Shown: in pieces, positions 16,838-38,362 of the stretch
Numbering within the stretch: position 1 is the first letter of the stretch
How the letters are laid out: every line of letters begins with the position of its first letter
NCBI GenBank assembly: GCA_044892525.1
Contig: CM097885.1
Coordinates: 150,660,001-150,724,000 of the forward strand
Source of the DNA: Schmidtea polychroa
Lineage: Eukaryota
Direction: 5' to 3'
Length of the DNA: 64,000 nucleotides
Program-made: the position numbers and the translations under genes
Notes under the pieces: model-generated
What the model was told of the DNA's origin: nothing
The model's database searches: none
Seen by the model: only the letters and a program-made list of their open reading frames with translations

Positions 16838-16892
16838 ACTGCTATACGAAAATTTTTATTTACAATTATTTACATTGATCATTCATCTTTAA

Positions 16893-21044: not shown

Positions 21045-24000
21045 CTATATACGTGAGCTTGGAGGGCGCTGAGCATTCCAGGCCTCCACCCACTGTTCCT
21101 GCTTGATATTACTTGGTCGTTTTACACGATGTTGAAAATTTCTTATTCTGGCCATTTCTAGTTCTCCGTGATGCCGTCTATCTTTGATTATTTTTATTGT
21201 CCCCCCCGTTATGATTAAAAAGGCCCCTGTTATTATTATGCCGCTGATCCACATCATCTGTTTTATGCTTATAATTTCCGCTTTTTCCTTGCTCGTTATT
21301 GTTGATATTGTTTCTGTGCTTTTTAGATTACCGTCTTTGCCATTTCCTTTCATCATTCCTCGTATTCTTGCTATTTCCTCGTTCATACCTTCCTTTGCCA
21401 TTTTTTGTATTTTCTCCATCTCCTCCTCGGATACATAATTGTCTTGGTGTTTCTCACTGTTTTTCTTGCGTTTTCCTTGCTCATCTTTTTCATCATCGAT
21501 TTTTCTTTTCTTTCCTCTTTTCCCAGGGTATCGTCGACATTCTCTCGCTGTATCTTTTCTCCAGATGCATATTGTGTATTCTTTTGGAGGTTGTTGCTGT
21601 ATTACATATTGTAGACAGTCTTCACCCGGTCTTAATCTTGCGATGCAGACTTTGTGTTCTTTTCTTGGCTGGAGTTGCGTTATCACTACCTCACCTCCTT
21701 TTCCCAGGTGTACCTCCTTCCCTTTGACTTTCGTTATTCTCTTCCCTTCTCGATTTCGGTATGCTTCTTGTATTCTTACTTCCGTTATTGGTTCTGCATC
21801 TTCATTTTTTAACACTAGTCTCTGATAAGCTCTAGACATACATCTTCCTAATATACACCTTTCTTTTAAATCCCATTCTTCTTTTAGATCCCATTGCTGC
21901 TCTTGTACTTGTTTTTTCTTTTCTTGTTTTAGTTCTTCCTCTTTGTTGTCCTTATTTCCCGTTTCTTTGGCTTCTTTTATCGTTCTCATTCCTCCCTGGG
22001 CTGTTATCATTTCCACCATTGTTAGTACGAGTATCATTATCATCATATTTGTCTCCATTTCTTTGTTGGTAAAAAGTAGGCATACCCTCTGTTTTCCACT
22101 ATTCGTCTTTTCTTCTTGCTTCATTCGGTTTCTCGGGTTATTTTCCTCTTTTTCCCTACTCGCGTCGTTATTTTCTTGATTATTCTCCTCTAATTTCTCT
22201 TTCTCTTTATTCCCGTTTCGACCTTTTTCATTATTATCGTCGTCTTTATCGTCTTTATCGTCTTTATCTCCCCCGCTATCGTTTAAAATGTCGTCCTCGA
22301 CATTTATATCATTCAACAATCTGCGGTATGCCGTTAGCACTCTGTTTCTTGCTAATTTTGCTTCGAGTTCGAACTCCTTTCTGCCTGTTGCTACATGTCT
22401 TTTTCTATTCCATTCTTTCACTAATTCTCTTAATTGTATCCGACGATGTTTCCCGATTCGCTTTTGTTCGTTTAGATTCTGCGTGAATTTGAGATCTTCC
22501 CTGTTTAATACGATCATTATGATTTTCGGAGTTCCTCCTTTTGTTAGTGTATTTTTAACCATAGCATTTTCTCCGTTTTCGTAGAACTCATTTATGTTTA
22601 TTGCATATTTATTGCTTTGTGGTATTCTCCATGTTAGCAGCAACTTCATGGCTTCTAAGTTCATCCGTATCGTGTTCCATTGGAACTGTGACGTGTTTTT
22701 ACAGATATTTTCTACCTCAGTTCTTGTAGCATTTTTACAAATGAATCTAATCATTTCCAAGTTTGGTTGTATTGTTGCCCAATCCATGGTAGAATTTCCT
22801 TCGTTTGATATTTCGTCAAGTCTCGAACCTGATTGATGTAGTATATGTAATGTTTTCGGGTGTATATTTGTTATGGCTGCATACATCATTGCTGTTTCCC
22901 CTTGTTCATTTTTTGCATTAGATTCTTCTCCGAAGTCTCTAAGGATTCTTATGATGGTTATTGCTCTGTTTTCTTTTGCAGCTAAAATGGCTTGTTGTAA
23001 TGGTGTTCTTGAGTCTTTTGTTGGTAAGGTGAATGCTAGTGGTATAAATGTTTTTATTTTTCCTATGTCTAGATTTGTGGTCTGATCTCTTGCGTAGGTG
23101 TGTACTGTCTTGGTTATTTTTGCTAGTATCGCTTCATCGGATAGATCTTGCATTTCTTCAAAGAATACTTCTTTAGCCTTACGTACTACTATCTCTTGGT
23201 CGGAGTTTATTGTCTTTGGTTTACTTGTTGTTGCTATATCGGTTATTGGTTGCTCGACCTGTTCCTCAGACTTTCTTGTTTTTACTTTCTTCATTTTTAT
23301 CTTTTTCTTGTTCGAACTGTTAATGCGTTCCTCTGCCGTTAGAACTTGAATAATACTTAGGTAGTTTTCTCGAATGTTGTTCATAGTTTCCATCATATGT
23401 AAAACACTCACGGTGTCCCAAAATTTTACTTGTACTTTATCGGTAAATTGAGATATAGCTTTTTCGAAGTTGGTAATTCGTTTTCTGATTAGTTGTTCGT
23501 CTTTGTGATTTGAGAATTTTATGCCTCGTTGTAGTAGTTGATTTGGAATTTCGAATAGGTGATGTCCTCTCATTGCTTCTCTCATCAAGGTATTTTCTCC
23601 TTTGGTAAATGTTTCGTTTATATCCACCATATAATCGTTTTTTATCGGGTTCCTCCATGCAATTAGTATTCCAGTAATTGTTGTTAATTTCTCTTTGATT
23701 GCAGTAAATAGCCCGTCATACATGTTTCCTATCTCTCTATTATCCTCGTATGATATTAGATCTACTAAGATTATGAAGGCTTCCGTACTTTTCCCTTCGA
23801 TTGCATGATGTAATGCATTTTTCTGGTTGTGATCTTGTGTGGTTATCTTTGACCCAGTTTCGAGTAATGCGATGATAATATCTTTAGCTTTATCCCGATT
23901 GGCTGCTATCATTAGTGGAGTGTAACCTTGGTTGTTTTCTTGATCTGTCGAAATGTTACAATCGCGAAATGCTTCAATTGTTTCTAATATCTGTTCGTTA

Positions 24001-27000
24001 CTACCCACCTTTAAAAGCTTGTGCAGGGGTGTGTCTCCGTAGTGGTCTGTGATCGTGAATAATATAGGCCATTGACTTTTAACTACCCTGAGCAATGGGT
24101 GTGTTCTTTCTCGGTTTGCATAATTTTCGATCATTGTTAGCAGACCTCCCAATATCTCAAAATCTAATCTGTCTTCTGCCCATCCGGGCATTTTAACTTT
24201 TACTTCCTTTATGATTTTCTCGGCTTCTGATGGTTGTAACCCTAATCGATTACCTGTTGGTTCGTTTATTTGCTGTAACATGTTTATTCTATACGTTTGT
24301 GATCTTGTCGTTAGTGTACGTCCTTCTGGCTGACTGGTGGCGGTTTTCGGAATTGGCTTACATCGTGCAACATTTACATATATTGGCCTTGTAAAAGGGT
24401 TGTTCACTAATCGTACTCTTACATTAGTTTCTCCGACGAATAGAATCTCATACGGCCCTTTACCGTTTCGTTGTAATTTTTTGGTGGTTCCTGGAATTAA
24501 TTCTGGTGTTTCAATCATCACCCAATCGCCTGTTTGAAACGTATGCTGTTTGACGTTTTTCTTTCTATCATGTAACTCTTTGTAACTTTCTTGATAAAAT
24601 TTTATATTCAATCCTGCGGTTTCCCAGATTTCCTGCATTCTTTCCTTGAACTTGGTTACATAATCGTCTATTTCCATGTACTGTGATATCGGTGGCTGAT
24701 ATTCTAAATCCATTGGCATATTGCATTCTCTGCCGTACATCAACTTGAACGGACTCATCTTTGTGGACGCGTGAATCGACATTCTGTAAGCCATGAGGCA
24801 TAATTTTATATATTCATCCCAGTCTCGTTGATGACGATCGACATAATTTGATAACATTTGAATCAGTGTTCCATTGAATCTTTCTGTCATACCATTAGTT
24901 TGTGGATGGTACGGTGATGTTCTTAATTTTGCGATCTTGAAGTAGTTGGTGACTTCGCTCATTATTTCGCTCATGAAATTCGTTCCTTGATCCGTCAGTA
25001 TTTGTTTCGGCGTTCCATATCGACAACATATTTCCTCTACTAATATTTTTGCGATTGTTCTTGCTTTCTGATCTGCCATTGCGAATGCTTCGGGAAATTT
25101 TGTCAAATAATCTGTGATTACCAATATATATATATTTCCTCTATCTGATTCTGGTAGTGGACCGACTACGTCCATTGATATCATCGTCATTGGTTCTGCT
25201 GGCACTGGCATTGGCTTTAATGGTGCCTTCCATTTTGTTCCCGTGTTTTTTCTGGTTGCGCAAGTTATGCAATTTTTCACCCATTCCGTTACATCCTCGG
25301 TCAATGTAGGCCAAAAATATTTTTGTTTCATTCGTGCCAACGTCTTTTTAGATGACATATGTCCTCCGAGTCTTCCGTCATGGTATTGTGTTAGTAGATC
25401 TTTACGTCTATTCTCGGGAATGCACATCAGTCTTTTCTCGCCATCCATTATCAATAACCAATCTTTCTCGATAATATATCGATGTCGATGTTTATCCATA
25501 TGCTCCTTCAATTTTTGATCTTTCTCATATACCTCTGCTTTCCCTGTTTTCACATATTCAATGATTTGCTTCAACTCTGTATCCTCTTGTTGGTCTTTCC
25601 GTAATTGGCAAAAATCTAAATCTTCTGCTACCATCAGACATATTCGTTGCATTTCGTGATCTACTAAATCTGGAAAGATAAATCTGGACATACAATCCGC
25701 ATTGGCATTCGCTCTTCCCGCTTTGAATTTTATGAACGGTGAATATTCTTGTAACTGCATTGCCCATCGCATCAATCTACTTGAAGCTTCTTTGTGTTGA
25801 CCAAGCCATACTAATGGTTGATGATCCGTGGTGATACATATTTCGTGTCCCCATAACAAATATCGAAAGTGTTTAATTGCTTGTATGATTGCTAACGCTT
25901 CTCTCTCGGTTACGGAATAGTTTTTCTCGTGTTTTTTAAACGTTCTACTGTAGTATCCAATCACTCTTTCTTTTCCTTCTTCGTCGAGTTGTCCCAATAT
26001 TGCTCCGGCTGCATATCCACTTGCATCTGTTGCTAATAGGAACGGTTTCTTGAAATCAGGATGTACTAGTATTGGGGCTTCAATTAATTTATCTCGCAAT
26101 GTCTCAAACGCTTTTTGTTGTTCTGCACCCCAAATAAATGGAATATCCTTTTTCACTAATTCCTGTATTGGTTTCGCAATACCTGCATAGTTTTTGATGA
26201 ATTTTCGATAATATCCGCATAATCCGAGAAATTCTTGAACTTGGGTGACAGTTTTTGGTGCTGGACATGTTTTTATTTTTTCTAGGTTTCTTGGATCTGG
26301 TTCTTTGCCTTTTGCTGACACTATGTGTCCTAAGAACGTAACTTTTTCTTTTGCCCAATCACATTTGGATGGTTTAAGTTTCAGTTTCCATTGTCGTAAT
26401 CTAACGAACACATTTCTGATATCTTCCAAATGTTGTTCGAATGTTGCTGAATATATTAATAAATCATCAATATATACCATACACTGCTTGATCCCGTGTG
26501 TGACAAAATTCATACATCTCTGGAATGATGCTGGGGCATTGGTCAGTCCGAACGGCATTTTCCTGAATTGGTATAGATCTCGGCCCAATGTGAATGCTGT
26601 TTTCTCTTTGTCTTCCTCCTTGACTTTGATCTGCCAATATCCGCTTTTCAGATCTAAAGATGTAAAATATGCGGCCCCCTGTAACATAAGTAACATCTCA
26701 TTGATGTCTGGTAACGGGTATGTGTCTCTTTTTGTTACTGCATTTAATTTCCGATAATCGATACAGAATCTCTGAGTACCGTCTTTTTTCTTCACCATGA
26801 CTACTGGAAATTGCCATGGCGAACAACTTGGTTCGATCACTTGTGCATCTAGCATTTTTTGTACTTCGGCTTCGGCTATCTCTTTTTGCTTCTCCGCTAG
26901 TTTGTATGGGCGTAGTGCGATTGGAGTTTCGTCTATTAATGGTATTGCGTGTAATGTAACATCGCATGCTCCCAAATCTAAATCCGAAATTGCGAATATA

Positions 27001-30000
27001 TCTTTATATTCTATCAATAATTGTTGAAGTCTCTCCTTTTCTTTTTCCGTTAGCAAGGTGCTATCAATTATCCATAATTCGTCCGCTTTCGTTGTTTCGT
27101 TGGTGATTTTTGGTAATTCGATGTCTATCATGGGTGTCAATCTACCCAATCTTTCATTTTCATATATGATCTTGTCTTCTTCCTCGAAATTTGTGATGTT
27201 AATTGGTATTTCCCCGTCTTCATTTATTGTTATTATTTCTCTTGCTAATGGTAATTCTCGTCGTTTTTCGAATGATTTGCTTGGCTCAAAAATGACTTCT
27301 CCTTCCATTCCTGCATCCACTTTTATTTGACATATCATCTGTGATTTTGCGGGTACAATTATTTTCTCCGGACATCTAATTATTGCGTTCATCTTGCATA
27401 TTCTACCCATTTTGTCTTTTAGACACATTGTTGTTAAATCGATTACTACCTCCTTAAACAATTCCGGCATTAAATCCGTTCCGATTATACATGGTTCACT
27501 CAGTTTGGGTATCACCGCTAGATACGTTTCAATTTCGTTATCCTGATATCGTAACGTAGTCCACCATCTTCCTACTACGTCTACGGTTTCTTTACTGCAT
27601 GCAATAATATGGATAGTTGTTTGTTCGATATCCTTCCAACATTTACTGGGTATTTGGTTTATTGCTATTGCTGATACGTTTGCTCCGGTATCTATCATGG
27701 CGCTTGTCTCTTTCCCGTTGATTTGGATCATGACTGTTACTGCCGCACCTCCTGGTGAACTCATCACTGCTATCGTTCTTACGTCGTCCGCTTGGTCTAC
27801 ACTTTTCGTTCTTCGGGTCGGCATATAGTTCATTCCTGGTTGACTTGGTAACTGTGGATACATATTTTGTGTCATGGTCAAAGCTGTTTGTTGTCCAACG
27901 ATATCTGGTGGTATGTAACTTCCGTTGGCTATCCAGGTATTTGTTTTTTCTTTCTCCCAATATGGTGCTGTTTCTATTGGCTTTTCATTCGGGTTTCTAC
28001 TTGGATATGGGTATTTGTCATTCCCGTTGTCGTCATCATCACTATCGCTGCTGTTTGATCGATTCCTAAATCTGTCTAAGAATTTTGGTTTGTTCTTTTT
28101 CAGTTGCGTCCTTGTTGCTTCATCATACATCGTTTTCCGAAATCGTCTACCGACTTCCTCGTCAGTTCCTTTTATTTTTGTCAGTATTTTGATCAATCGT
28201 TTTATTCTGTGTATGTCTTTAGAATGACCGTGCAACACCATTGTTTTCGCCAAAAATGGTAGAAAGCCTACTATTAATTTCCAATTTACCTTCTTTTCTC
28301 TCTTATAGATATCAAAACACGCTAACATTTGAGTTAATATTACTCTGACGATCTGAATAATTAAGATGATTCCCAATATTCCTGCCATCATTTGACCGAA
28401 CACTAGAAATCTTCCCCACATTGCTTTCATCATGTTTGACGTGGCTTGTTGAAAATGATCAGGTGACAATAATAGTTCGTAATTGGGGCCTGACTGGAAA
28501 TTCGTTCCCCCAGTTATGGTAACCATATTCGATAGAATGGATTCCCGTCTTGCTGGGAATAATACGTTTAATCGTGCCGTTTCTAAATCCTCCGGTGAGT
28601 ACATACCTGCTTTTGACACATCAATTGGTTTGAAATCTTGTTCTGTTGCAAGTTCTATTAGTCCAAACTTTTTAGGTTCTTGTACTTCGGTTTTTACCGG
28701 TAACATTATCCATTTCCCATCGGGTTTTTCATATAACGGTCCGTATGCATTTGAACAGTTAAAGGTGTTCGGGTAAAATCCAATTGGGTTCATTATTCGA
28801 GTGACGGGTTGAACGAATCTGTTTCGCCCTTTGTAACTAATTTCTAACTCGTTTGCACATTTCCCTGGTGGAATTGTGGGCTTTCTTGGCAGTCGCGCAA
28901 ATGTCTTGGTACATGCATATGTATACATTACCTCTCCCACCATTCTACCAAAATGTCCATCCGGTAACGGGAGTGATGGCATTGTGTTATCTGGGTGTGT
29001 TATTGCGATGGCTAATTTTGTTTTTAGTATCTCTTTATTCAATGAACAGTCATTTTGTATAAGATCGTAATACACTTTTTGCATTGTCGTTTGTCCTCGG
29101 TGAAATAAAAAGTCCATTTTGTTATTGGCGTACAGGTACAATTTTACGTCCTCTGTTGCTACCTTTCCCACTGCTCGGTCTATTACTTGCCTGGACATGT
29201 AGATACCTGCGTAGTTCGTCCGGTATACTATGCTGTCACATTTGGTGGTTTCTTTTTCTCTAATGAATCTCATGCCGATATCTGGGTCATCTGTAATTAA
29301 TGCCGTTGGTGTTTTTTGGGTTGTGAGTCTCTTTTCTTTGGGGGATGGCGGAACTGGTTTCCCATTTCGCATCCTTACGTTTCCATTCTCTTCATCGTCA
29401 TCCTCGTTTTCGTAAATTTCTCCTTTTACTTCATTGAATAGAGCACTTTTTAACAATTGGAGTCGGCATTTTTGGGTGTTAGCTTCATATATTATAGTCG
29501 AAATTCCCGTTCTACACACGTTTTCCGTAGCTCTGCATGCTGGGTTGGTTTTCATTTGATAGTTGTTCGCGTCGAATTGTGCTTCGTATTCCTTCAACTC
29601 CACTGTGTAGGACTCAATTACTACTACTCCCGATATCACCTCTCCTCTGATCGTATATGTGCCTCCGTTACATGATCCATCAGTTGATTTTACTCGTCCA
29701 GCGACATAGATACTTTCTGTCTTGATCATTCCGCTTTGTCCGTGTATTGTTACTCCATCCCTGATTCTCATTGCTCCGGTTCTAAAAAGCTCTTTACAGT
29801 CTTCCCGTTGTATAGGTACTATTTCTTTATCTAATCCCGGTAATATAAGGGTTGAATATGAGTATTGTCCACAGTAATATGCCAACACTTTCTTTGATAC
29901 TACACATTCTCTAGCTTGCGTTCTAATGAAATCTGATTCTTGGTATACGTGATAGGAGACTTTCTTCTTTACTATATCTAATTTATTCGGAGACGCCTGT

Positions 30001-33000
30001 CTACATTCCTCTATATCTCTCAGGGAGTATCTTTCTCCTATTATCGAATTGTCACAGTCGTAAATAGTAAATCCCGCGGCTCCACTGGTGCAGAGCATCC
30101 ATATCATCATGGTCATCATTAGTGAATTAATCGACGCTTTTCTGCTGGCTGGGTCTTTCAATGGCAATTCCCATTCTAGCTCATGTAGTAACTTCTTCAA
30201 CCGAATTTGCATTGATCTCTCTTGCTCGTTTTTTCGTGGCGCTTGTATGAGTCTTTTCCACCCACCGGCGCGGATGATATGTGGTTCGATTGTATTTTCA
30301 ATGATTGTGACGGTCATTTCTACATGATTTGCGAATTGTTTGTTAGGTATTTTCCTTGCTGCTAATCCCATCAAATTGTACATTAGATACGTTAATACTA
30401 CTAAATGATGTTCGTCGTCGTTTGCGTTTAAAGTTAATTGTTCAATTACTCTTCTTGTCTCTTCCCAATCGGTTTTAGTGGTTTTTGTCTTCTCTTTGAT
30501 TAATTTCGGAATTATTCCGGATATTGTATTCCATAGTTGTCTGGCGTCTACGCTTGCTACTTTTCGTTGCCATAACCGTCGCAATTGTGGGTTCGTTATT
30601 ATTAGCATATCTTTTACTAGCTCTCGTATCCATTTTTCGCCTCTTTCGATAGTTGGCTGGGCCTCTTTTAGATCCCACACTATTTTATCCAGTTTCTCTA
30701 ATCTGACTTGTCCTTGTTCTTGTTTCAGTTGTTCTCTAGTTTTAAATTCCGGTTTTTCTCCTTGCTTCTTGGGTCTCCCTTTTGCCCGTTTTTCCATCAT
30801 TGTTCCGGCTTCCCTTGTATTTTCATAATTCGGGTTTCTCTCGTTATCCGTTCTTGGCAATGAGCTATCGTTATTTCTTAGCCATTCGTTCCATTCGTCT
30901 ATTATTTTGTCCGTTTGACCTTCTGGTGTTGCTTTCGTTGGTCCTTTCTGTCGTTGGAATTGTTCGTCGGTTTCGGTTTCTGTTGTATTATCGATAATCT
31001 CCTCGATACTCAGCTTATTTGGCTGCTGATAGCTAGTTGACGGTTGGCTTGTTGTCCATATTTCGGCTCCTGTCGGCCATCTTACCAGAATTGGTGATCT
31101 TTCTCCAGCTCCTTCATCGCTGTCTTCCAATATAATTTCCTCGATTTCCTCGGTTTCATTCGTTTTACTTGCCACTTTGTTAGGGCTTGGTGTACTCAAG
31201 CTACCTTTCGTAGGTTTACTGGATTTGTTCTTCCTTTTAATCGGTTTTCCCAATGTTTCTGCCATTGTCAATACATTGATCTCCCCCAATCTCATGGGTG
31301 TTATTCCGACATCTGCATTATCATCCAACGATTTTCCGAATAGTTGTAGGTGAAATGGAGTTTCGTATGCTAATTTCTTTTTTAACTCTCTGATCTTTGT
31401 TGTTGGATGTACTTCTGTATCCTCAATGCTTTTGTCGGGATACTTGACTCGGATACGATACCTTTCCTGGGTATCTTGTGCCCATTCTTGGTTTCTCCAT
31501 TTCCTAATAATTTGTTCTAGCTGTTCTGGGTACCATTCGTTATATTGTCTGTATTCCTCAATCGCTTTCGCCATTTCTCTTAGATTGTGGATATTCTCTG
31601 ATGTCTTTAGGATGATGTTAGCCAATGCTATTACTTGACGTTTTTGATTTTTTGTTCCCGTTGCTAAGATATCACCTAATTGTTTATATCTTTCCTTCTC
31701 TTCTCGTTCTCGAGCTTCCATCGCTTCTTCGCTATCCATATCGGCATATTCGCGTTCTTTCTTTCTCATCGCATGAATATGTCTGGTTTCCGTTTCACTT
31801 TCTGATGTAACATCCGTTTCGCTTCCGTCGTCCGATGTCGATTCTATTTCGTCCTCTTCGTATTTTGGAGGTTCATCTTCCTCTTCTTCTGATTCACTTT
31901 CTATCTCACTAATGTCTGTTTCCACGAAAATCCCTTTCCTGATTTTCCATTCTTTGTTTTCCGCATTCCACGTCCTTTCCCATGGGGTTCGTCTGCAGGA
32001 TCTCACACTTAGTTTCTTTATTTTTCCTTGAAGCTCTTTTTCTTTTAACCACTGTTGATGAATTTCAATTATCTCTACTGATTTTTGATATAGCGTTTTC
32101 ATCCTGTCTCGTATTTCTTTCTGGTATGTTATATCTCTTGTTCGGAATTCGTCCATGGGCAATATTCTGATGATTTGATGATTATCCCACATTCCCATTT
32201 CGCTTAGCGAGGTGTCGTCTTCGGCCCGTAATATTATTTTATCGTACATCATGACTACGTCATCTATCATCCCGTCGCTACTCTCGCTTCGTACTTTTTC
32301 CGTTATCTCTTGGTTTATCTTGGTTACTAAGTCATCTACCGTACTCTGATTACTCATCTTTATTCGTCGTTTCTCCTCGTTTGGTAACCATATGGTTATT
32401 TCTAATTTCTGCGGTTGCGTTTCTTTCAACCTGCCATATTTGTGGATCAAATTTATGGTTCTCCAATCGCTCATCCTGAGCAATTCTGTATCTCGTAATC
32501 GGCTCATTAGTTCATGCATGTCTGGAGTTCGTCTTGCTATGAGTAAATCCCAGTTATCTTCGACTTGTTCTTGAATTTGTTTGATTAATTTATCTAGATT
32601 TCGTCGCAAGGTGCATTGTTTTATTTGTTCCAGCTTCAGCTTGATGCTAAAATCGTACTCGGCCTTTGCGTCTTTAGCCCATTCGTGAATATTTGCTGGT
32701 TGTTTCTCTTTATACAATTTCAATATTTGAGTTTCTCCTGGCCAGATCAATGCATCTATTAGGTGCATGTCTGGTTTGATTTGTTCTCCTTGATGTTGAT
32801 ACAGATATTCTTTCTTTCTCGAGCTGCCCAAATGTTCTCTTATCCAATCGAAAAGGTCGTCTGTGACTGCATTTTTTATCCATATTCTCTCGAGTCCTTT
32901 ACTCGTTCCGATTTTTATTACATAGCGTGTTGTCTCCGCTTGTTTCATTTTTTCCATATACTTCTTTATTATCACTTTTTCCTCGTTTGGTATTAGGTCT

Positions 33001-35480
33001 TTTTCGTTTCTTTCTAGTTTCATTATCTTTTGTATGAAGCGTCGGTATGGTATGATGTCAATGAATTCCTGGTTTCTTACCACCACTGGAAGTATTTCCT
33101 TTACTTGTTTTATCGCTTCTTCTCTTTCTTTTCTCAATTTCATTTCGATATTCTCGTCTTCGCTTTCGCTTGTCACGTCGCTTTCTCTTTCATCTTCATC
33201 TGCTCCGATCTTTTCTCTTAGTTGGTCGATATTTTCATTTAACTGTAACATTTCTCCACCAAGGCTACTCACATAATCCTCATCGTCATCTGTTGACAAC
33301 ACCTTCTTTGTTGTCCTCATCATATTAATTCGTAAATTTCTCATTCTTGGTACTTTCTTTAACTTGTTGTTCTCGAGTATCGTTAGCTCCTCTGAGTCTA
33401 ATTCTCGTATCATATTATGCTTTAGATGATTAATCTGTTTTTCATTTTCGTTATTTTCTGCTTCTGCTTCTGTTTTTGTTTGCTCATTTTCTCTTTCGAT
33501 TTTATCTTTTATCTTTTTCCAAAATATTTTCTGAATTCTCTGATTTCCTTTTAGTGGTGTTGTTGAATTTTCCTTTTTTGCTGCTGTAATTGTTTCTTTC
33601 GGTTTCTCTGGTTCGCTCATAGGTACAACTCTTGGATTTTTACCGTAATTGTAACAATATTGCTCCTTTATCTCCTTTACCATCCTCATCATATTTATTC
33701 GTAGTGGTTGTTCTTGTCGCTGCTGAATTCGCTCTCTTTTTATCCTTTCTTCTTCAGCTTGTAGTCTTTGCCATTCTTGTGCATGTTGTTGCACTTCATA
33801 ATTGTTAAGATTCTCGGTGCTTCTCATCATGCGTATATTCTGGGTTGGTTGTGGTACTTGCTCTTGTCTCGGTCTCATCATTTGTTGCATCATCTGCTTC
33901 ATTTGTGAAATTTCTTGCATCACATTCATTTGCTTTCCCTCACTAGGATTACTTTGTCGTTGCGGATTTGGTGCATAGTTATTATTTCGCTGTGGTGGTC
34001 GTTGCTGTTGGCTCCTTTCTCGACAGTCTCTTGAGATATGACCTAGTTGCCCGCAGTTAAAACATCCTCTTGATTGGCATATATTTTCCGTGTGTCCTCG
34101 TCGTCCACACCTATTGCAATTTGCGTTTCGGTAACAATCTCTATCCCAATGTCCTGGTTTACCGCATGTTCGGCATTGTTTGTTATCGTTCATATTTCGT
34201 CGATTATTAAAGTTGTTCCCATTGTTCGAGTTGTTGCGTTCACTGTTATTCCCGTTTGATCGTCCTTGTGGTGGTTTGAAAATTTGATGTGCTCCTGGTA
34301 TAAACTGATTCATCTTGGGTTCATGATTATTGTTATCCCCATTTTCCGTTTTCACCGTGGCTGTTGCGATTCTTCCCTCCTCTTGCATGACGTTCATTTG
34401 TGCTGGGAGGTGTAGTTCGCATCTTGTGGCCCAATCTATGGCTTCTTCTAGTGTTTTACACATTTGACATCCCACCGAGGCCCTTACCTCTTCTCGGCGT
34501 AGTCCTTCTATGAAGTAACCAATTAAATTTTCCTCCGGCAAGTTTCCGTTCATGGCCTTCTTTGCCAATCTTCGCAATTCACTTGCGTATAACGTAATTG
34601 ACTCGTTTGCTCTTTGTTTTCTACTTGCCAGTTCACCTAACGCTTGATTTATTGGTTTGCTGGCTCCGAATGTTTTTCTCAAAAATGTTTTGATGTTTTC
34701 CCAATTGTCTAATTTCGTATTTCTTTCTTTTGCTTCCAGATACACTTCGAGTGCGCTATCGCACAAAAACAGAGGCATTCGTTTACTAATTGCTTCGGAT
34801 GTCCATCCACACACATCGATATAGACTTCAAAATTTGTTATGAACGTTGCCAACTTGTTCGCATTCCCGTTGAACGGTTCGCCTCTAAATTTTTCTTTAT
34901 ATTCGTCGGGTTTTGCTACATTCATCTTGATTGGTTCTTGAAATGCTATTATTTCTTTTAAATTTTCTAGTGATGTAGCTAAACTATGGACGGATAATTC
35001 TTCCGTTGACCCGGTTAGGTTGTTTGTTATATCGGATAGACTTTCTCTACTTCTAGATCGACTGGGCGTATGTCCGGCTGTGGGGTTTTCTTGATCGTAT
35101 ATCGGTGTTTTGTGGGGTCTTTTTGCTCCTTGTGATATTCCTCTCTGCTGCCTAAATGATCGTCCTCTTTTGAGTTGATCTAATTCGTCTCCTGAAAATA
35201 ATACGTCTCCTGGCTTACTTGAAGATCTAAGGTTGGGTTTATCCGTGATTTTCCTTTTACTCTTTTCTGTCTTTTCACGTGGATTTTCTACAGTTAGCGT
35301 CTGCTGAATTGGTCGAGTTCGGTTTTGATATTGTCTTCCTTTGTGCGGGTTCTGAATTGCTTTTCCTGGGTTGTTTGTATATTCTCTGGATTCCTCTTGA
35401 GCTGGTTCTGAATTGACTTGGTTGGATGGATGTCTACAATGAAAATATGATATCGTGTTGCCTTTGCTTACACGAATCAA
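21045..35480 (-). CDS. Single-ORF giant polyprotein: Gag, Ubl x3, Bcl-2-like, chuvirus-like glycoprotein, PR, RT, RH, INT, ankyrin, signal/TM module (4,811 codons)
   Basis: No internal stop over 14,436 bp. First in-frame ATG at 34925 (Met186). Motifs: three CX2CX4HX4C, DTG, YIDD, TDAS, HHCC and D-D-E, ankyrin TPLH repeats. Confidence 0.96.
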   Translation of the reverse strand: MIRVSKGNTISYFHCRHPSNQVNSEPAQEESREYTNNPGKAIQNPHKGRQYQNRTRPIQQTLTVENPREKTEKSKRKITDKPNLRSSSKPGDVLFSGDELDQLKRGRSFRQQRGISQGAKRPHKTPIYDQENPTAGHTPSRSRSRESLSDITNNLTGSTEELSVHSLATSLENLKEIIAFQEPIKMNVAKPDEYKEKFRGEPFNGNANKLATFITNFEVYIDVCGWTSEAISKRMPLFLCDSALEVYLEAKERNTKLDNWENIKTFLRKTFGASKPINQALGELASRKQRANESITLYASELRRLAKKAMNGNLPEENLIGYFIEGLRREEVRASVGCQMCKTLEEAIDWATRCELHLPAQMNVMQEEGRIATATVKTENGDNNNHEPKMNQFIPGAHQIFKPPQGRSNGNNSERNNSNNGNNFNNRRNMNDNKQCRTCGKPGHWDRDCYRNANCNRCGRRGHTENICQSRGCFNCGQLGHISRDCRERSQQQRPPQRNNNYAPNPQRQSNPSEGKQMNVMQEISQMKQMMQQMMRPRQEQVPQPTQNIRMMRSTENLNNYEVQQHAQEWQRLQAEEERIKRERIQQRQEQPLRINMMRMVKEIKEQYCYNYGKNPRVVPMSEPEKPKETITAAKKENSTTPLKGNQRIQKIFWKKIKDKIERENEQTKTEAEAENNENEKQINHLKHNMIRELDSEELTILENNKLKKVPRMRNLRINMMRTTKKVLSTDDDEDYVSSLGGEMLQLNENIDQLREKIGADEDERESDVTSESEDENIEMKLRKEREEAIKQVKEILPVVVRNQEFIDIIPYRRFIQKIMKLERNEKDLIPNEEKVIIKKYMEKMKQAETTRYVIKIGTSKGLERIWIKNAVTDDLFDWIREHLGSSRKKEYLYQHQGEQIKPDMHLIDALIWPGETQILKLYKEKQPANIHEWAKDAKAEYDFSIKLKLEQIKQCTLRRNLDKLIKQIQEQVEDNWDLLIARRTPDMHELMSRLRDTELLRMSDWRTINLIHKYGRLKETQPQKLEITIWLPNEEKRRIKMSNQSTVDDLVTKINQEITEKVRSESSDGMIDDVVMMYDKIILRAEDDTSLSEMGMWDNHQIIRILPMDEFRTRDITYQKEIRDRMKTLYQKSVEIIEIHQQWLKEKELQGKIKKLSVRSCRRTPWERTWNAENKEWKIRKGIFVETDISEIESESEEEEDEPPKYEEDEIESTSDDGSETDVTSESETETRHIHAMRKKEREYADMDSEEAMEAREREEKERYKQLGDILATGTKNQKRQVIALANIILKTSENIHNLREMAKAIEEYRQYNEWYPEQLEQIIRKWRNQEWAQDTQERYRIRVKYPDKSIEDTEVHPTTKIRELKKKLAYETPFHLQLFGKSLDDNADVGITPMRLGEINVLTMAETLGKPIKRKNKSSKPTKGSLSTPSPNKVASKTNETEEIEEIILEDSDEGAGERSPILVRWPTGAEIWTTSQPSTSYQQPNKLSIEEIIDNTTETETDEQFQRQKGPTKATPEGQTDKIIDEWNEWLRNNDSSLPRTDNERNPNYENTREAGTMMEKRAKGRPKKQGEKPEFKTREQLKQEQGQVRLEKLDKIVWDLKEAQPTIERGEKWIRELVKDMLIITNPQLRRLWQRKVASVDARQLWNTISGIIPKLIKEKTKTTKTDWEETRRVIEQLTLNANDDEHHLVVLTYLMYNLMGLAARKIPNKQFANHVEMTVTIIENTIEPHIIRAGGWKRLIQAPRKNEQERSMQIRLKKLLHELEWELPLKDPASRKASINSLMMTMMIWMLCTSGAAGFTIYDCDNSIIGERYSLRDIEECRQASPNKLDIVKKKVSYHVYQESDFIRTQARECVVSKKVLAYYCGQYSYSTLILPGLDKEIVPIQREDCKELFRTGAMRIRDGVTIHGQSGMIKTESIYVAGRVKSTDGSCNGGTYTIRGEVISGVVVIESYTVELKEYEAQFDANNYQMKTNPACRATENVCRTGISTIIYEANTQKCRLQLLKSALFNEVKGEIYENEDDDEENGNVRMRNGKPVPPSPKEKRLTTQKTPTALITDDPDIGMRFIREKETTKCDSIVYRTNYAGIYMSRQVIDRAVGKVATEDVKLYLYANNKMDFLFHRGQTTMQKVYYDLIQNDCSLNKEILKTKLAIAITHPDNTMPSLPLPDGHFGRMVGEVMYTYACTKTFARLPRKPTIPPGKCANELEISYKGRNRFVQPVTRIMNPIGFYPNTFNCSNAYGPLYEKPDGKWIMLPVKTEVQEPKKFGLIELATEQDFKPIDVSKAGMYSPEDLETARLNVLFPARRESILSNMVTITGGTNFQSGPNYELLLSPDHFQQATSNMMKAMWGRFLVFGQMMAGILGIILIIQIVRVILTQMLACFDIYKREKKVNWKLIVGFLPFLAKTMVLHGHSKDIHRIKRLIKILTKIKGTDEEVGRRFRKTMYDEATRTQLKKNKPKFLDRFRNRSNSSDSDDDDNGNDKYPYPSRNPNEKPIETAPYWEKEKTNTWIANGSYIPPDIVGQQTALTMTQNMYPQLPSQPGMNYMPTRRTKSVDQADDVRTIAVMSSPGGAAVTVMIQINGKETSAMIDTGANVSAIAINQIPSKCWKDIEQTTIHIIACSKETVDVVGRWWTTLRYQDNEIETYLAVIPKLSEPCIIGTDLMPELFKEVVIDLTTMCLKDKMGRICKMNAIIRCPEKIIVPAKSQMICQIKVDAGMEGEVIFEPSKSFEKRRELPLAREIITINEDGEIPINITNFEEEDKIIYENERLGRLTPMIDIELPKITNETTKADELWIIDSTLLTEKEKERLQQLLIEYKDIFAISDLDLGACDVTLHAIPLIDETPIALRPYKLAEKQKEIAEAEVQKMLDAQVIEPSCSPWQFPVVMVKKKDGTQRFCIDYRKLNAVTKRDTYPLPDINEMLLMLQGAAYFTSLDLKSGYWQIKVKEEDKEKTAFTLGRDLYQFRKMPFGLTNAPASFQRCMNFVTHGIKQCMVYIDDLLIYSATFEQHLEDIRNVFVRLRQWKLKLKPSKCDWAKEKVTFLGHIVSAKGKEPDPRNLEKIKTCPAPKTVTQVQEFLGLCGYYRKFIKNYAGIAKPIQELVKKDIPFIWGAEQQKAFETLRDKLIEAPILVHPDFKKPFLLATDASGYAAGAILGQLDEEGKERVIGYYSRTFKKHEKNYSVTEREALAIIQAIKHFRYLLWGHEICITTDHQPLVWLGQHKEASSRLMRWAMQLQEYSPFIKFKAGRANANADCMSRFIFPDLVDHEMQRICLMVAEDLDFCQLRKDQQEDTELKQIIEYVKTGKAEVYEKDQKLKEHMDKHRHRYIIEKDWLLIMDGEKRLMCIPENRRKDLLTQYHDGRLGGHMSSKKTLARMKQKYFWPTLTEDVTEWVKNCITCATRKNTGTKWKAPLKPMPVPAEPMTMISMDVVGPLPESDRGNIYILVITDYLTKFPEAFAMADQKARTIAKILVEEICCRYGTPKQILTDQGTNFMSEIMSEVTNYFKIAKLRTSPYHPQTNGMTERFNGTLIQMLSNYVDRHQRDWDEYIKLCLMAYRMSIHASTKMSPFKLMYGRECNMPMDLEYQPPISQYMEIDDYVTKFKERMQEIWETAGLNIKFYQESYKELHDRKKNVKQHTFQTGDWVMIETPELIPGTTKKLQRNGKGPYEILFVGETNVRVRLVNNPFTRPIYVNVARCKPIPKTATSQPEGRTLTTRSQTYRINMLQQINEPTGNRLGLQPSEAEKIIKEVKVKMPGWAEDRLDFEILGGLLTMIENYANRERTHPLLRVVKSQWPILFTITDHYGDTPLHKLLKVGSNEQILETIEAFRDCNISTDQENNQGYTPLMIAANRDKAKDIIIALLETGSKITTQDHNQKNALHHAIEGKSTEAFIILVDLISYEDNREIGNMYDGLFTAIKEKLTTITGILIAWRNPIKNDYMVDINETFTKGENTLMREAMRGHHLFEIPNQLLQRGIKFSNHKDEQLIRKRITNFEKAISQFTDKVQVKFWDTVSVLHMMETMNNIRENYLSIIQVLTAEERINSSNKKKIKMKKVKTRKSEEQVEQPITDIATTSKPKTINSDQEIVVRKAKEVFFEEMQDLSDEAILAKITKTVHTYARDQTTNLDIGKIKTFIPLAFTLPTKDSRTPLQQAILAAKENRAITIIRILRDFGEESNAKNEQGETAMMYAAITNIHPKTLHILHQSGSRLDEISNEGNSTMDWATIQPNLEMIRFICKNATRTEVENICKNTSQFQWNTIRMNLEAMKLLLTWRIPQSNKYAININEFYENGENAMVKNTLTKGGTPKIIMIVLNREDLKFTQNLNEQKRIGKHRRIQLRELVKEWNRKRHVATGRKEFELEAKLARNRVLTAYRRLLNDINVEDDILNDSGGDKDDKDDKDDDNNEKGRNGNKEKEKLEENNQENNDASREKEENNPRNRMKQEEKTNSGKQRVCLLFTNKEMETNMMIMILVLTMVEMITAQGGMRTIKEAKETGNKDNKEEELKQEKKKQVQEQQWDLKEEWDLKERCILGRCMSRAYQRLVLKNEDAEPITEVRIQEAYRNREGKRITKVKGKEVHLGKGGEVVITQLQPRKEHKVCIARLRPGEDCLQYVIQQQPPKEYTICIWRKDTARECRRYPGKRGKKRKIDDEKDEQGKRKKNSEKHQDNYVSEEEMEKIQKMAKEGMNEEIARIRGMMKGNGKDGNLKSTETISTITSKEKAEIISIKQMMWISGIIITGAFLIITGGTIKIIKDRRHHGELEMARIRNFQHRVKRPSNIKQEQWVEAWNAQRPPSSRI
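22730..24065 (-). other. Two ankyrin-repeat blocks (~23720-24065 and ~22730-23015) after integrase
   Basis: DHYGDTPLHKLL, NNQGYTPLMIAA, DHNQKNALHHAI; DSRTPLQQAI, NEQGETAMMYAA, NEGNSTMDWA. Confidence 0.88.
24400..25440 (-). other. Integrase (HHCC, DDE, GPY motif)
   Basis: HDGRLGGH...CITC, DVVGPLP, TDQGTNF, NGMTERFN, GKGPYEI. Confidence 0.96.
25690..26940 (-). other. pol: Reverse transcriptase and RNase H (Ty3/gypsy type)
   Basis: FCIDYRKLNAVTKRDTYPLP, LDLKSGYWQI, MPFGLTNAPASFQR, VYIDDLLI (YIDD at 26463-26474). RNase H LATDASGYAAGAIL, YSVTEREALAII, TDHQPL. Confidence 0.97.
27400..27770 (-). other. Aspartic protease domain
   Basis: AMIDTGANVSAI (DTG at 27684-27692) and the downstream CIIGTDLM flap-side motif. 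Confidence 0.93.
28230..30135 (-). other. Env-like chuvirus-type (class III) glycoprotein: internal signal peptide, Cys-rich ectodomain, TM
   Basis: Signal LMMTMMIWMLCTSGAAG then FTIYDC. Conserved pattern YCGQYSYS, GSCNGGTY, YANNKMDFL, GHFGRMVGEVMYTYAC, CANELEISYKGRNRFVQPVTRI, GMYSPEDL...FP. TM WGRFLVFGQMMAGILGIILIIQIVRVIL. Confidence 0.82.
30240..30720 (-). other. Divergent Bcl-2-like helical domain
   Basis: VIEQL...(hydrophobic helix)...IEPHIIRAGGWKRL matches Bcl-2 VVEEL...LHTWIQDNGGWDAF, spanning 64 vs 63 residues from the first V to GGW. The BH1 NWGR motif is absent. Confidence 0.6.
31261..32927 (-). other. Three ubiquitin-like (beta-grasp) domains (~32705-32927, ~32158-32408, ~31261-31463)
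   Basis: The third, RYRIRVKYPDKSIEDTEVHPTTKIRELKKKL...LQLFGKSLDD, aligns by eye to ubiquitin [30 protein letters not shown]...LIFAGKQLED. The second has STVDDL...YDKIIL...DDTSLSEMG. The first is weaker. Confidence 0.7.
34023..34925 (-). other. gag: Gag domain (capsid plus three CCHC zinc knuckles at 34134-34175, 34077-34118, 34023-34064)
   Basis: EPFNGNANKLATFITNFE...YASELRRLAKKA...YFIEGL capsid pattern. Knuckles CRTCGKPGHWDRDC, CNRCGRRGHTENIC, CFNCGQLGHISRDC. Confidence 0.93.
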
Positions 35481-36145
35481 TCATTCCTTTTTGCCACATT
35501 CAAGCACAGACACCGTTTTAGGGCCTCTGTTATACTTCTCTTCATTTCCCCTCATACGCTTCTTCGCGGAATATAATTTCCCATCAACCCATATTTTTCG
35601 TCGATTTTAAATTATCTATTTGGGGTGGTAACAATTATCTATATAGTCGTATAAATTATCTATAGCTAGCATTTATAATATCGATAGGTCGTTGTCAGTT
35701 ACTGCTTATTACCCCCCATATTTTCTTAATCCTTTTACGCGGTTCCGCTATTTTACTTAATCTTTCATCTCTGTTTCCCCTTATTTGGTTCTACTCTGTA
35801 ACCAAAACAAAATTCGTTTAACCGGTTTAAACCAAAAAAATTCTGTAGAACTTTGTCTACTTATCTGGGATCCCTTTTAATTAATTAATCACCTTCCTCT
35901 TTTACTCATCACTTATTCTTTATTTTCATTATCTCTTTAATTCATTTTCCTTTTCCGTTTCTCTTTCCCACTGAAAAAAAATTTTCATTATTACTTCCCA
36001 CGAGCTCGTTTAATTCTTTCTAAATTCAAATACCATATTTCAAACTCACTTTGCTTCTAGCTAGCTTTAATATTCCATCTCACTAGTAATTTAAATGTTA
36101 TCAACTTGTAGCTTGAATGCTATCTCACTATTACTTTAGGCCTTT

Positions 36146-38337: not shown

Positions 38338-38355
38338 ATCCCGGCTGAGCCCCCA
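38338..38355 (-). other. Primer-binding site, tRNA-Pro type
   Basis: Minus strand reads TGGGGGCTCAGCCGGGAT (18 nt), close to the known tRNA-Pro PBS TGGGGGCTCGTCCGGGAT. It lies 7 nt inside the 5' LTR end. Confidence 0.85.
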
Positions 38356-38362
38356 AAAATCA

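What the first reader, a model, noticed from the sequence alone, without database searches (positions are those of the whole stretch)
28230..30135. Chuvirus-type fusion glycoprotein fused in-frame BETWEEN Gag and protease
Seen: a ~610-aa Cys-rich ectodomain with an internal signal peptide (…CTSGAAG|FTIYDC) and a C-terminal TM, inside the same ORF as Gag and Pol and upstream of the DTG protease. Known: this Cys/motif pattern is that of Chuviridae glycoproteins (class III fusogens), which BEL/Pao elements in mosquitoes have captured. Retroelement env genes normally lie 3' of pol as a separate spliced ORF, and here the RT is clearly gypsy. Inference: an independent env capture with a new architecture. 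Signal peptidase would split Gag from Env-Pol, leaving Pol attached to the glycoprotein's cytoplasmic tail. That would deliver Pol to membrane budding sites at 1:1:1 stoichiometry without frameshifting, i.e. a candidate infectious retrovirus-like lineage.
Basis: partly seen in the sequence, partly recalled or inferred. Interest (0 to 1): 0.95.

Follow-up and report, generated by a model that had tools for sequence, protein, structure and literature searches.

The report
Giant retroelement with in-frame envelope gene
An intact 30.7-kb Burro-type gypsy retroelement carries a chuvirus-like class III fusion glycoprotein in the same reading frame between Gag and protease; this is real and striking, but the layout was already described for planarian Burro elements in 2019.

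Summary
Window 11840-42493 (minus strand) is a complete LTR element of 30,654 bp. Its 4,131-bp LTRs differ at one base, and a 4-bp target duplication flanks it. It has one uninterrupted 4,811-codon ORF. Residues 1784-2420 of that ORF (window 28221-30131) lie between Gag/3xCCHC and the DTG protease. They match Pfam PF24664, the Monjiviricetes fusion glycoprotein family (E 7.6e-72). They fold with confidence (pLDDT 85.6). The nearest predicted structures are chuvirus-like glycoproteins (Foldseek E 1e-38, TM up to 0.60). The nearest solved structures are herpesvirus gB (E 2e-14). All 14 ectodomain cysteines are conserved, and so are an internal signal peptide and a C-terminal membrane anchor. At least 17 diverged polyproteins elsewhere keep the order Gag-Env-PR-RT-RH-IN. 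In one sister pair env has dN/dS of about 0.03, as constrained as integrase. Arkhipova and Yushenova (2019) reported this in-frame env between gag and pol in Burro/GYPSM1. Gag-Env-Pol elements with gB-type Env are also published for nematodes, bryozoans and flatworms. The signal-peptidase and membrane-tethered-Pol model is plausible but remains an inference. Verdict: real, functional-looking and already known.

The parts
11840..42493 (-). Complete giant LTR retroelement (30,654 bp), Burro-like Ty3/gypsy type
   Evidence: LTR pair found by self-BLAST. GC is 36-43% against 25-30% in the flanks. Ends read TG...CA.
38363..42493 (-). 5' LTR (4,131 bp)
   Evidence: 99.976% identical to the 3' LTR over 4,131 bp. 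It holds a 254-aa ORF with no Pfam match.
11840..15970 (-). 3' LTR (4,131 bp)
42494..42497 (-). Target-site duplication, upstream copy (CTAA on the element strand)
   Evidence: Read directly. The same 4 bases lie at 11836-11839.
11836..11839 (-). Target-site duplication, downstream copy
21045..35480 (-). Uninterrupted polyprotein ORF: 4,811 codons, first ATG at 34925, 0 stops, no frameshift seen
34023..34775 (-). Gag: Retrotrans_gag (residues 236-329) plus three CCHC zinc knuckles (residues 436-486)
   Evidence: Pfam; regex for the knuckles.
30258..30410 (-). Weak Bcl-2-like match (residues 1691-1741) just upstream of the Env signal
   Evidence: Pfam E 0.76, below the family cut-off. The literature reports BCL2-like at this position in Burro. 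The single-sequence AF2 model was unusable.
30072..30131 (-). Internal signal-peptide-like segment (residues 1784-1803), predicted cleavage after A-A-G
   Evidence: Uncharged run at 1786-1807. It sits at the same position as the N-terminal signal peptides of free-standing viral glycoproteins. It is conserved in 17 polyprotein relatives.
28416..30071 (-). Env ectodomain (residues 1804-2355), class III fusogen fold, 14 conserved Cys
   Evidence: Pfam PF24664 E 7.6e-72. AF2 pLDDT 85.6. Foldseek against PDB finds gB at E 2e-14. Foldseek against BFVD finds chu-like glycoproteins at E 1e-38. Cys columns are invariant or at least 90% conserved.
28317..28415 (-). Env membrane anchor (about residues 2356-2388)
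   Evidence: Kyte-Doolittle peak of 2.53 at 2364-2382. The model has a long helix across it.
27735..28316 (-). Cytoplasmic tail / linker from the Env anchor to the protease (about 195 aa)
   Evidence: No Pfam match. No BLAST match to relatives, and its length varies among them.
27459..27734 (-). Retroviral aspartyl protease (residues 2583-2674, DTG at 2597)
   Evidence: Pfam RVP E 2.1e-7; motif.
24849..26795 (-). RT (2896-3054, YIDD), RNase H (3117-3246), integrase H2C2 + core (3354-3544)
   Evidence: Pfam; motif.
22839..23984 (-). Ankyrin-repeat region after integrase (residues 3833-4214)
   Evidence: Pfam Ank_2 and Ank_4.
19039..20427 (-). Accessory ORF, 462 aa, TRAF-like (RING + TRAF zinc finger + MATH)
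   Evidence: Pfam MATH_2 E 2.8e-26 and zf-C3HC4 E 9.5e-5.
37406..37885 (-). Leader ORF, 159 aa, with a C-terminal RING (zf-C3HC4_3)
   Evidence: Pfam E 3e-8.
36185..36904 (.). 80-bp tandem repeat array in the 5' leader

Best explanation
What it is. This is a recently inserted, intact member of the Burro-type giant Ty3/gypsy retroelements, the kind described in planarians. An ancestor of this clade captured the glycoprotein gene of a chuvirus-like negative-strand RNA virus. It fixed that gene in the polyprotein reading frame between the Gag side and the protease.

Shown here:
- The captured segment keeps everything a free-standing viral G has: a signal peptide, a class III ectodomain with the family's 14 cysteines, and a C-terminal anchor.
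- The layout is conserved across a diverse clade.
- In relatives, env is under purifying selection as strong as that on integrase.

Inferred mechanism:
1. The roughly 1,600 N-terminal residues (Gag, zinc knuckles, ubiquitin-like and Bcl-2-like modules) are made in the cytosol.
2. The internal signal then targets the ribosome to the ER.
3. Signal peptidase cuts after residue 1803.
4. The ectodomain enters the lumen and folds with seven disulfides.
5. The anchor at about 2356-2388 stops transfer.
6. The tail, PR, RT, RNase H, IN and ankyrin region stay cytosolic, tethered to the membrane through Env.
7. The element's own protease then releases the mature parts.

This processing logic is that of flavivirus and alphavirus structural polyproteins (established knowledge). 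Gag, Env and Pol would be made in equal amounts. Trimeric Env would allow membrane fusion and spread between cells.
For: Element integrity:
- LTRs 99.976% identical over 4,131 bp.
- TSD and TG..CA ends.
- A 4,811-codon ORF without stops.

Env identity:
- PF24664 at 242.7 bits, E 7.6e-72.
- 1,034 relatives at E<1e-3, including the Tacheng Tick Virus 4 glycoprotein.
- AF2 pLDDT 85.6 with a 48-residue central helix.
- gB is the best PDB match; chu-like, qin-related and xinmovirus glycoproteins are the best BFVD matches, TM up to 0.60.

Signal peptide:
- All 17 polyprotein relatives examined have a charged n-region, a hydrophobic h-region and a small-residue c-region.
- This sits where the free-standing glycoproteins have their N-terminal signal.
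- A/G/S occupies the position 6 residues before the conserved Cys in 20 of 25 sequences.

Architecture and selection:
- Of 17 long representative proteins with an embedded Env, all six full-length ones read Gag-Env-(PR)-RT-RH-IN. The rest, several of them partial, carry Gag upstream of Env and/or Pol domains downstream.
- All 18 embedded Envs fall on one side of one split in a neighbour-joining tree of 129 Envs.
- dN/dS for P0001 against P0002: env 0.026, IN 0.024, RH 0.01, variable modules about 0.2.

Literature:
- Burro env lies in-frame between gag and pol (PMC6431247).
- BURRO1 is described as abundant, active, transcribed and PIWI-controlled (PMC8532177).
Against: - No direct evidence here for translation, ER targeting, cleavage, glycosylation, trimerisation, fusion or particles.
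- No sister copies of this exact element could be retrieved. Selection was therefore measured on relatives that are only 40% identical to it, and dS there is saturated (1.45).
- The signal and anchor rest on hydrophobicity and positional homology, not on a trained predictor.
- The host could not be identified. Assignment to Burro rests on matching published descriptions, not on alignment to a reference Burro sequence.
- MATH/TRAF lies in a separate ORF here, not inside ORF1 as reported for Burro-1.
- Pfam did not detect the reported dUTPase-like module.
- Equimolar Gag:Pol is unusual for retroviruses, and a spliced mRNA cannot be excluded.
Confidence: 0.75

Rival explanations
1. Env (or Env-Pol) is made mainly from a spliced or internally initiated subgenomic mRNA, as in ordinary retroviruses. 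On this view the in-frame position is a by-product of where the gene was inserted, not the basis of a polyprotein-processing mechanism.
For: The signal segment of the window copy begins with a cluster of Met codons (residues 1788-1794 region). Several relatives also have Met in that stretch. Env expression by splicing is the rule in retroviruses and errantiviruses (established knowledge).
Against: No stop follows the Env anchor in any of the relatives examined. Such an mRNA would therefore still encode Env-Pol. Met at the start of the signal is not conserved: P0005, for example, has none there. The signal keeps a charged n-region typical of a functioning internal or N-terminal signal in either case. 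No transcript data were available.
Confidence: 0.2
2. The glycoprotein module is kept for an intracellular or cell-to-cell role, not to make free infectious virions. Possible roles are tethering Pol and assembly to internal membranes, or fusing neighbouring cells.
For: Pol is physically joined to the Env tail in every relative. Strong constraint shows that there is a function but not which one. The element carries host-manipulating modules: TRAF-like, RING, ankyrin and a weak Bcl-2-like match.
Against: The whole ectodomain is conserved with bona fide RNA-virus entry proteins, including all 14 cysteines and the class III domain layout. That fits a retained fusion function better than a mere tether.
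Confidence: 0.2
3. The segment is a decaying passenger, a relic of an endogenous viral element, with no present function.
For: None specific. Only one N-glycosylation sequon is present.
Against: The frame is intact inside a 4,811-codon ORF. All family cysteines, the signal and the anchor are kept. dN/dS is 0.026 in a sister pair. Few sequons is a trait of the whole family: median 2 in embedded Envs and 3 in free-standing glycoproteins.
Confidence: 0.03
4. The arrangement is an assembly chimera or a nested insertion of an unrelated env-bearing element.
For: The window has assembly gaps elsewhere (N runs outside the element).
Against: There are no N runs inside 11840-42493. A single frame runs through both junctions. 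The same order occurs on independent contigs from several sources. Composition is uniform across the ORF.
Confidence: 0.01

Closest known systems
Burro / GYPSM1 giant gypsy-like LTR retrotransposons of planarians (Jurka 2007; Grohme et al. 2018; Arkhipova & Yushenova 2019, PMC6431247)
   Same: More than 30 kb with multi-kb LTRs. A single huge ORF1 (4,873 aa reported; 4,811 codons here). Retrotrans_gag plus three CCHC knuckles, ankyrin repeats, a MATH/TRAF module, a Bcl-2-like region before env, tandem repeats, and env in-frame between the Gag side and PR with hits to mononegavirus glycoproteins.
   Different: MATH/TRAF is a downstream accessory ORF here, not part of ORF1. The dUTPase-like and BIR motifs were not detected by Pfam. 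Nucleotide identity to a reference Burro and the host species could not be checked. The 2019 paper linked env to gypsy Env by HHpred; here the fold is clearly class III, chuvirus/gB-like.
Gag-Env-Pol 'errantiviruses' with HSV/gB-type Env in Nematoda, Bryozoa and Platyhelminthes (eLife 2026, PMC13524379), and the non-canonical nematode ERVs of Sacco et al. 2022 cited there
   Same: Ty3/gypsy backbone, a class III Env captured from an RNA-virus-like source, and env placed before pol.
   Different: Those are described as separate GAG, ENV and POL ORFs of ordinary size. Here all three are one frame inside a 14.4-kb ORF with many extra modules.
Mosquito BEL/Pao elements carrying Chuviridae-like glycoproteins (Dezordi et al. 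2020, as cited in PMC13524379)
   Same: The same glycoprotein family was captured by an LTR retroelement.
   Different: The backbone differs (BEL/Pao against gypsy). Polyprotein-embedded Envs form their own group apart from 108 free-standing relatives, which fits a separate capture.
Glycoproteins of Chuviridae and related Monjiviricetes (Pfam PF24664), e.g. Tacheng Tick Virus 4 G
   Same: Sequence family membership, 14 conserved Cys, signal and anchor, and the best structural match (TM 0.60).
   Different: Identity is only 19-27%. The protein is embedded in a retroelement polyprotein instead of being a 650-690-aa stand-alone protein.
Herpesvirus gB (class III fusogen)
   Same: Overall fold. 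Foldseek E 2e-14, probability 1.0, about 640 aligned columns.
   Different: About 10% identity and TM 0.35-0.40. There was no sequence-level hit to any PDB chain. The relationship is at fold level only.
Flavivirus / alphavirus structural polyproteins (works-like comparison only)
   Same: An internal signal sequence after a cytosolic capsid-side protein. The glycoprotein is translocated and anchored, with host signal peptidase plus a viral protease doing the processing (established knowledge).
   Different: These are unrelated proteins and a different replication strategy. No membership is claimed.

Membership tests
Ty3/gypsy (Metaviridae) LTR retroelement | Pol order PR-RT-RNase H-IN, with gypsy-type RT_RNaseH_2 and Integrase_H2C2 domains | tested here: met
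   Pfam order and E-values. No BEL/Pao-type protease family was reported.
Ty3/gypsy (Metaviridae) LTR retroelement | Flanking LTRs with TG...CA ends and a short target-site duplication | tested here: met
   4,131-bp LTRs at 99.976% identity. TG/CA ends and a 4-bp CTAA duplication.
Ty3/gypsy (Metaviridae) LTR retroelement | Gag with a nucleocapsid zinc knuckle | tested here: met
   Retrotrans_gag E 2e-10. Three CCHC knuckles.
Burro / GYPSM1 family | Total length above 30 kb and ORF1 of about 4.8-5.1 thousand residues | tested here: met
   30,654 bp and 4,811 codons, against the description in PMC6431247.
Burro / GYPSM1 family | Env-like segment in-frame between a Bcl-2-like region and PR | tested here: met
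   Env at residues 1784-2420 and PR at 2583. The Bcl-2 match itself is only E 0.76.
Burro / GYPSM1 family | Extra modules: ankyrin repeats, MATH/TRAF, ubiquitin-like, dUTPase-like, BIR | tested here: inconclusive
   Ankyrin is met. MATH/TRAF is present but in an accessory ORF. Ubiquitin-like is only E 0.14. dUTPase and BIR were not reported by Pfam.
Burro / GYPSM1 family | Sequence identity to reference Burro elements; planarian host | not testable with these tools
   No reference sequence or host label is available. The exact proteins are not in the collection. No close loci were found.
Monjiviricetes fusion glycoprotein (Pfam PF24664; chuvirus-type G) | Profile score above the curated cut-off | tested here: met
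   242.7 bits against a cut-off of 27.
Monjiviricetes fusion glycoprotein (Pfam PF24664; chuvirus-type G) | Conserved cysteine framework; signal at the N-terminal end of the module and a C-terminal anchor | tested here: met
   All 14 ectodomain Cys columns are invariant or at least 90% conserved in 62 sequences. Signal and anchor.
Class III viral fusion proteins (gB / rhabdovirus G / gp64) | Fold similarity of the whole ectodomain to solved class III structures, with a long central helix | tested here: met
   Foldseek against PDB: gB at E 2e-14, probability 1.0. Helix at residues 335-382 of the model.
Class III viral fusion proteins (gB / rhabdovirus G / gp64) | No internal furin-type priming cleavage needed | tested here: met
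   No R-x-K/R-R motif within the ectodomain. This shows absence of the motif only.
Class III viral fusion proteins (gB / rhabdovirus G / gp64) | Bipartite internal fusion loops; trimer; membrane-fusion activity | not testable with these tools
No multimer prediction or assay was possible.
Infectious enveloped retrovirus-like agent | Enveloped particles and transmission between cells or hosts | not testable with these tools
   No expression, particle or distribution data for this copy.

The most novel reading that the evidence does not exclude
This copy belongs to a currently transmissible enveloped retrovirus-like lineage of flatworms. In it, host signal peptidase separates the Gag side from an Env-Pol fusion, and Pol reaches budding sites because it hangs on the cytoplasmic tail of a class III fusogen. 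No studied retrovirus uses this packaging route.
Probability: 0.2. Interest if true: 0.75.

Novelty: already known. Interest (0 to 1): 0.3.

Why it matters
Burro-type elements are among the largest retroelements known and make up a large share of planarian genomes. An env kept under strong selection inside the polyprotein suggests that they behave as proviruses, not as simple transposons. That bears on how they spread, and on why PIWI control of them matters in regenerating animals.

The core point is already in the literature, so this finding does not open a new question. This analysis adds four things:
- a confident class III, chuvirus-like fold assignment;
- a conserved internal signal peptide at the exact position of the viral one;
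- a single-origin pattern for the embedded Envs;
- a quantitative constraint estimate (env dN/dS of about 0.03).

Tried and rejected
- The word-indexed protein search with the Env piece alone found nothing. Relatives sit inside much longer proteins, outside that tool's length window. Searching again with the whole ORF and a region worked.
- Sequence search of the PDB gave only chance hits for Env and nothing for the Bcl-2-like region.
- Scans of viral and metagenome contigs for close sister copies found none.
- Exact look-up of six of the element's proteins found none. The host and the copy number in its genome therefore stayed unknown, and dN/dS could not be measured on true sister copies.
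- A single-sequence AF2 model of residues 1600-1810, meant to test the Bcl-2-like claim, was unusable (pLDDT 42). It was not sent to fold search.
- The Grohme et al. 2018 paper is not held in the library.
- tblastn of the polyprotein against the rest of the window found only an unrelated, decayed pol (about 29% identity), not a sister copy.
- The decay, chimera and chance readings are rejected for the reasons given under the rival explanations.

Full report
**1. What is in the sequence**

The finding sits inside a very large element on the minus strand.
- Self-comparison finds two direct repeats of 4,131 bp, at 11840-15970 and 38363-42493. They are 99.976% identical, which is one difference.
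- On the element strand they begin TG and end CA. The same four bases, CTAA, flank them on both sides.
- The unit is therefore a complete LTR element of 30,654 bp, and its near-identical LTRs point to a recent insertion.
- Its G+C is 36-43%, against 25-30% in the flanks.
- None of the window's N runs lies inside it.

One ORF runs from 35480 to 21045, 4,811 codons without a stop. The ORF lister uses bacterial start codons; the first ATG is codon 186. No breaks were seen in this ORF or in the accessory ORFs.

**2. Domain order**

Pfam on the whole ORF, together with motif searches, gives this order:
- Retrotrans_gag (residues 236-329)
- three CCHC knuckles (436-486)
- a long stretch with only sub-threshold hits: ubiquitin-like E 0.14 and Bcl-2 E 0.76
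- PF24664 'Monjiviricetes_fusion' (242.7 bits against a cut-off of 27, E 7.6e-72)
- RVP (2583-2674, DTG at 2597)
- RVT_1 (2896-3054, YIDD)
- RNase H
- Integrase_H2C2 and rve
- ankyrin repeats

The PR-RT-RH-IN order, together with RT_RNaseH_2 and Integrase_H2C2, is the Ty3/gypsy pattern. The finding's coordinates, 28230-30135, correspond to residues 1782-2417.

**3. The glycoprotein segment**

- Residues 1786-1807 form an uncharged run. Basic residues precede it, and it ends A-A-G before F1804.
- Residues 2364-2382 are the most hydrophobic stretch of the whole polyprotein.
- Between them lie 552 residues with 14 cysteines. The 1,264 residues before the signal have three.
- There is one N-x-S/T sequon and no furin-type motif in the ectodomain. 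Few sequons are typical of the family: median 2 in embedded Envs and 3 in free-standing relatives.

An exhaustive HMMER search found 1,034 relatives at E<1e-3. Many are free-standing proteins of 620-700 aa at 22-27% identity. One of these is the annotated glycoprotein of Tacheng Tick Virus 4 (E 2.3e-36). Others are beetle and bee genome copies annotated as glycoprotein or as uncharacterised.

In a 62-sequence alignment, all 14 ectodomain cysteine columns are invariant or at least 90% conserved.

**4. Fold**

- AlphaFold2 on that alignment gave mean pLDDT 85.6, with beta-rich domains and a 48-residue central helix.
- Against solved structures, the 50 listed matches, the best of 115 with E <= 0.001, are all herpesvirus gB. 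The best has E 2e-14, probability 1.0 and TM 0.35-0.40 over about 640 columns.
- Against predicted viral structures, the best matches are chu-like, chuvirus, qin-related and xinmovirus glycoproteins (E 1e-38 to 1e-30, TM up to 0.60). Rhabdo-like glycoproteins come next, then gB.
- Sequence search of the PDB found nothing meaningful.

The 'chuvirus-type, class III' part of the reading is thus confirmed by family profile, named sequence hit and fold. Fusion loops and trimer state could not be examined, because the model's coordinates are not exposed to scripts.

**5. Is the internal signal real?**

I mapped the first conserved cysteine in 17 polyprotein relatives and 7 free-standing glycoproteins, then read the 40 residues before it.
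- Every polyprotein has basic residues, a 10-14-residue hydrophobic core (best 10-residue Kyte-Doolittle score 1.9-3.5) and a short polar stretch.
- This occupies the place where the free-standing proteins have their N-terminal signal peptide, 20-37 residues from Met1.
- The residue six positions before the conserved Cys is A, G or S in 20 of 25 sequences.

The viral signal peptide was therefore kept when the gene was captured, and it has been conserved as an internal signal. No trained signal or topology predictor was available, so cleavage itself is an inference.

**6. Do relatives keep the layout, and is env constrained?**

- A region-restricted search with the whole ORF found six polyproteins of 2,694-4,057 aa whose precomputed Pfam lists include PF24664 together with PR, RT, RH and IN.
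- Mapping the window's modules onto them by BLASTP shows the order Gag-Env-(PR)-RT-RH-IN in all six. Env is 32-40% identical and RT 62-65% identical to the window.
- Among the exhaustive-search representatives, 17 long proteins have Env joined to Gag upstream and/or Pol downstream.
- The linker from the Env anchor to PR varies from about 90 to about 600 residues. In one relative it contains ankyrin repeats.
- In a neighbour-joining tree of 129 Env segments, all 18 embedded Envs fall on one side of a single split. Only two short proteins join them, and these look like fragments of polyproteins. There are no support values. The pattern fits one capture at the base of this clade, separate from the free-standing copies.

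Two relatives, P0001 and P0002, are 93% identical in Env. Their DNA was fetched and Nei-Gojobori estimates were made per module:

| Module | dN/dS | Note |
|---|---|---|
| env | 0.026 | pN 0.037, pS 0.64 |
| IN | 0.024 | |
| RH | 0.010 | |
| RT region | 0.056 | |
| variable middle and post-IN parts | about 0.2 | |

dS is saturated (about 1.45), so the ratios are approximate. The ranking is clear all the same: env is core, not a passenger. One relative's contig shows direct repeats about 16 kb apart around the polyprotein.

True sister copies of the window's own element could not be found.

**7. What is already known**

- Arkhipova & Yushenova 2019 (PMC6431247) review the planarian Burro elements (Grohme et al. 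2018; GYPSM1 of Jurka 2007). These exceed 30 kb and have a 4,873-aa ORF1. They carry Retrotrans_gag followed by three CCHC knuckles in Schmidtea mediterranea, MATH/TRAF, ubiquitin-like, Bcl-2-like and ankyrin motifs, and tandem repeats.
[quoted passage not shown] It proposes that Burro elements are integrated proviruses.
- The window's element matches that description point by point. The exception is that its TRAF-like module is a separate downstream ORF.
- A 2026 eLife paper (PMC13524379) reports GAG-ENV-POL Ty3/gypsy elements with gB-type Env in Nematoda, Bryozoa and Platyhelminthes. It notes chuvirus-like glycoproteins next to gypsy POL in arthropods. It cites Sacco et al. 2022 for nematode metaviruses that captured an RNA-virus glycoprotein, and Dezordi et al. 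2020 for the mosquito BEL/Pao case.
- Li et al. 2021 (PMC8532177) describe BURRO1 as abundant, active, intestine-enriched in expression and controlled by SMEDWI-2.

The host of this window could not be established. AT-rich flanks fit a planarian genome (my own knowledge), but that is not proof.

**8. Mechanism**

Shown: the anatomy, family, fold, conservation of signal and anchor, conserved layout, and constraint in relatives.

Inferred:
- The Gag-side part is cytosolic.
- The internal signal engages the ER and is cut after residue 1803.
- The ectodomain is lumenal.
- The anchor stops transfer.
- The tail, PR, RT, RH, IN and ankyrin part stays cytosolic on the membrane until the element's protease frees it.

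This is the logic of flavivirus and alphavirus structural polyproteins (established knowledge). Equal output of Gag, Env and Pol follows from the single frame. Single-frame gag-pol is itself not unique among Ty3/gypsy elements (my own knowledge, for example Tf1). A spliced or internally started env-pol mRNA remains possible, as does a role limited to cell-to-cell events.

**9. Verdict**

It is wrong about novelty.

Score: already known, interest 0.3. The most novel reading still open is a transmissible enveloped agent that packages Pol through its tether to the Env tail. I put this at about 0.2.

Noticed in passing
window 19039-20427 (-): Accessory ORF of 462 aa downstream of the polyprotein, with RING, TRAF-type zinc finger and MATH domains. 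This is a TRAF-like protein carried by the element. In published Burro-1 the MATH/TRAF module is inside ORF1.
   Followed up: partly
window 37406-37885 (-): 159-aa ORF in the 3.4-kb leader, with a C-terminal zf-C3HC4_3 RING (E 3e-8) of the kind found at the end of IAP-type proteins. No BIR domain was detected.
   Followed up: partly
window 36185-36904: Array of 80-bp tandem repeats in the leader, between the 5' LTR and the polyprotein ORF. The central copies are 98-99% identical.
   Followed up: no
window 21186-22046 (-), ORF residues 4479-4765: The C-terminal end of the polyprotein has a second hydrophobic pair: a signal-like stretch at 4479-4497 and a strong anchor-like stretch at about 4745-4765. 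A very charged 247-aa stretch with 6 Cys lies between them. There is no Pfam match and no match in the relatives. It could be a second membrane module or a tail anchor.
   Followed up: partly
window 30072-30410 (-), ORF residues 1691-1803: The weak Bcl-2-like match ends about 45 residues before the Env signal peptide. If signal peptidase cuts after 1803, the hydrophobic core would be left as a C-terminal membrane anchor on the Bcl-2-like module, which is the usual topology of Bcl-2 proteins. This is an idea only; the AF2 model of the region was unusable.
   Followed up: partly
window 31350-31454 and 32286-32426 (-): Sub-threshold ubiquitin-family (E 0.14) and PI3K ras-binding-domain (ubiquitin-like fold, E 0.21) matches between Gag and Env. 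They fit the Ubi2/SUMO-like motif reported for Burro.
   Followed up: no
window 12375-13139 and 38898-39662 (-): Each 4.1-kb LTR holds a 254-aa ORF with no Pfam match.
   Followed up: partly
window about 50591-50836 (-) and 55869-59661 (+): Fragments of a different LTR-retroelement pol (RT, RNase H and IN, about 29% identical to the main element). No ORF of 120 aa or more lies on the + strand there, so this copy is decayed. The breaks were not counted. The strong positive AT skew at 54-60 kb marks it.
   Followed up: partly
P0004 residues 2126-2316: In one relative the ankyrin repeats lie between the Env anchor and PR instead of after IN. The accessory modules have therefore moved around within the polyprotein during the clade's history.
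   Followed up: no
L001 16872-18689; L003 14249-15688: Contigs of relatives carry other genes near the polyprotein. L001 has a DNA_pol_B_2 gene; on L001 direct repeats lie about 16 kb apart, and the second copy lies between the polyprotein and this gene. L003 has an RNase_T-family exonuclease ORF.
   Followed up: no
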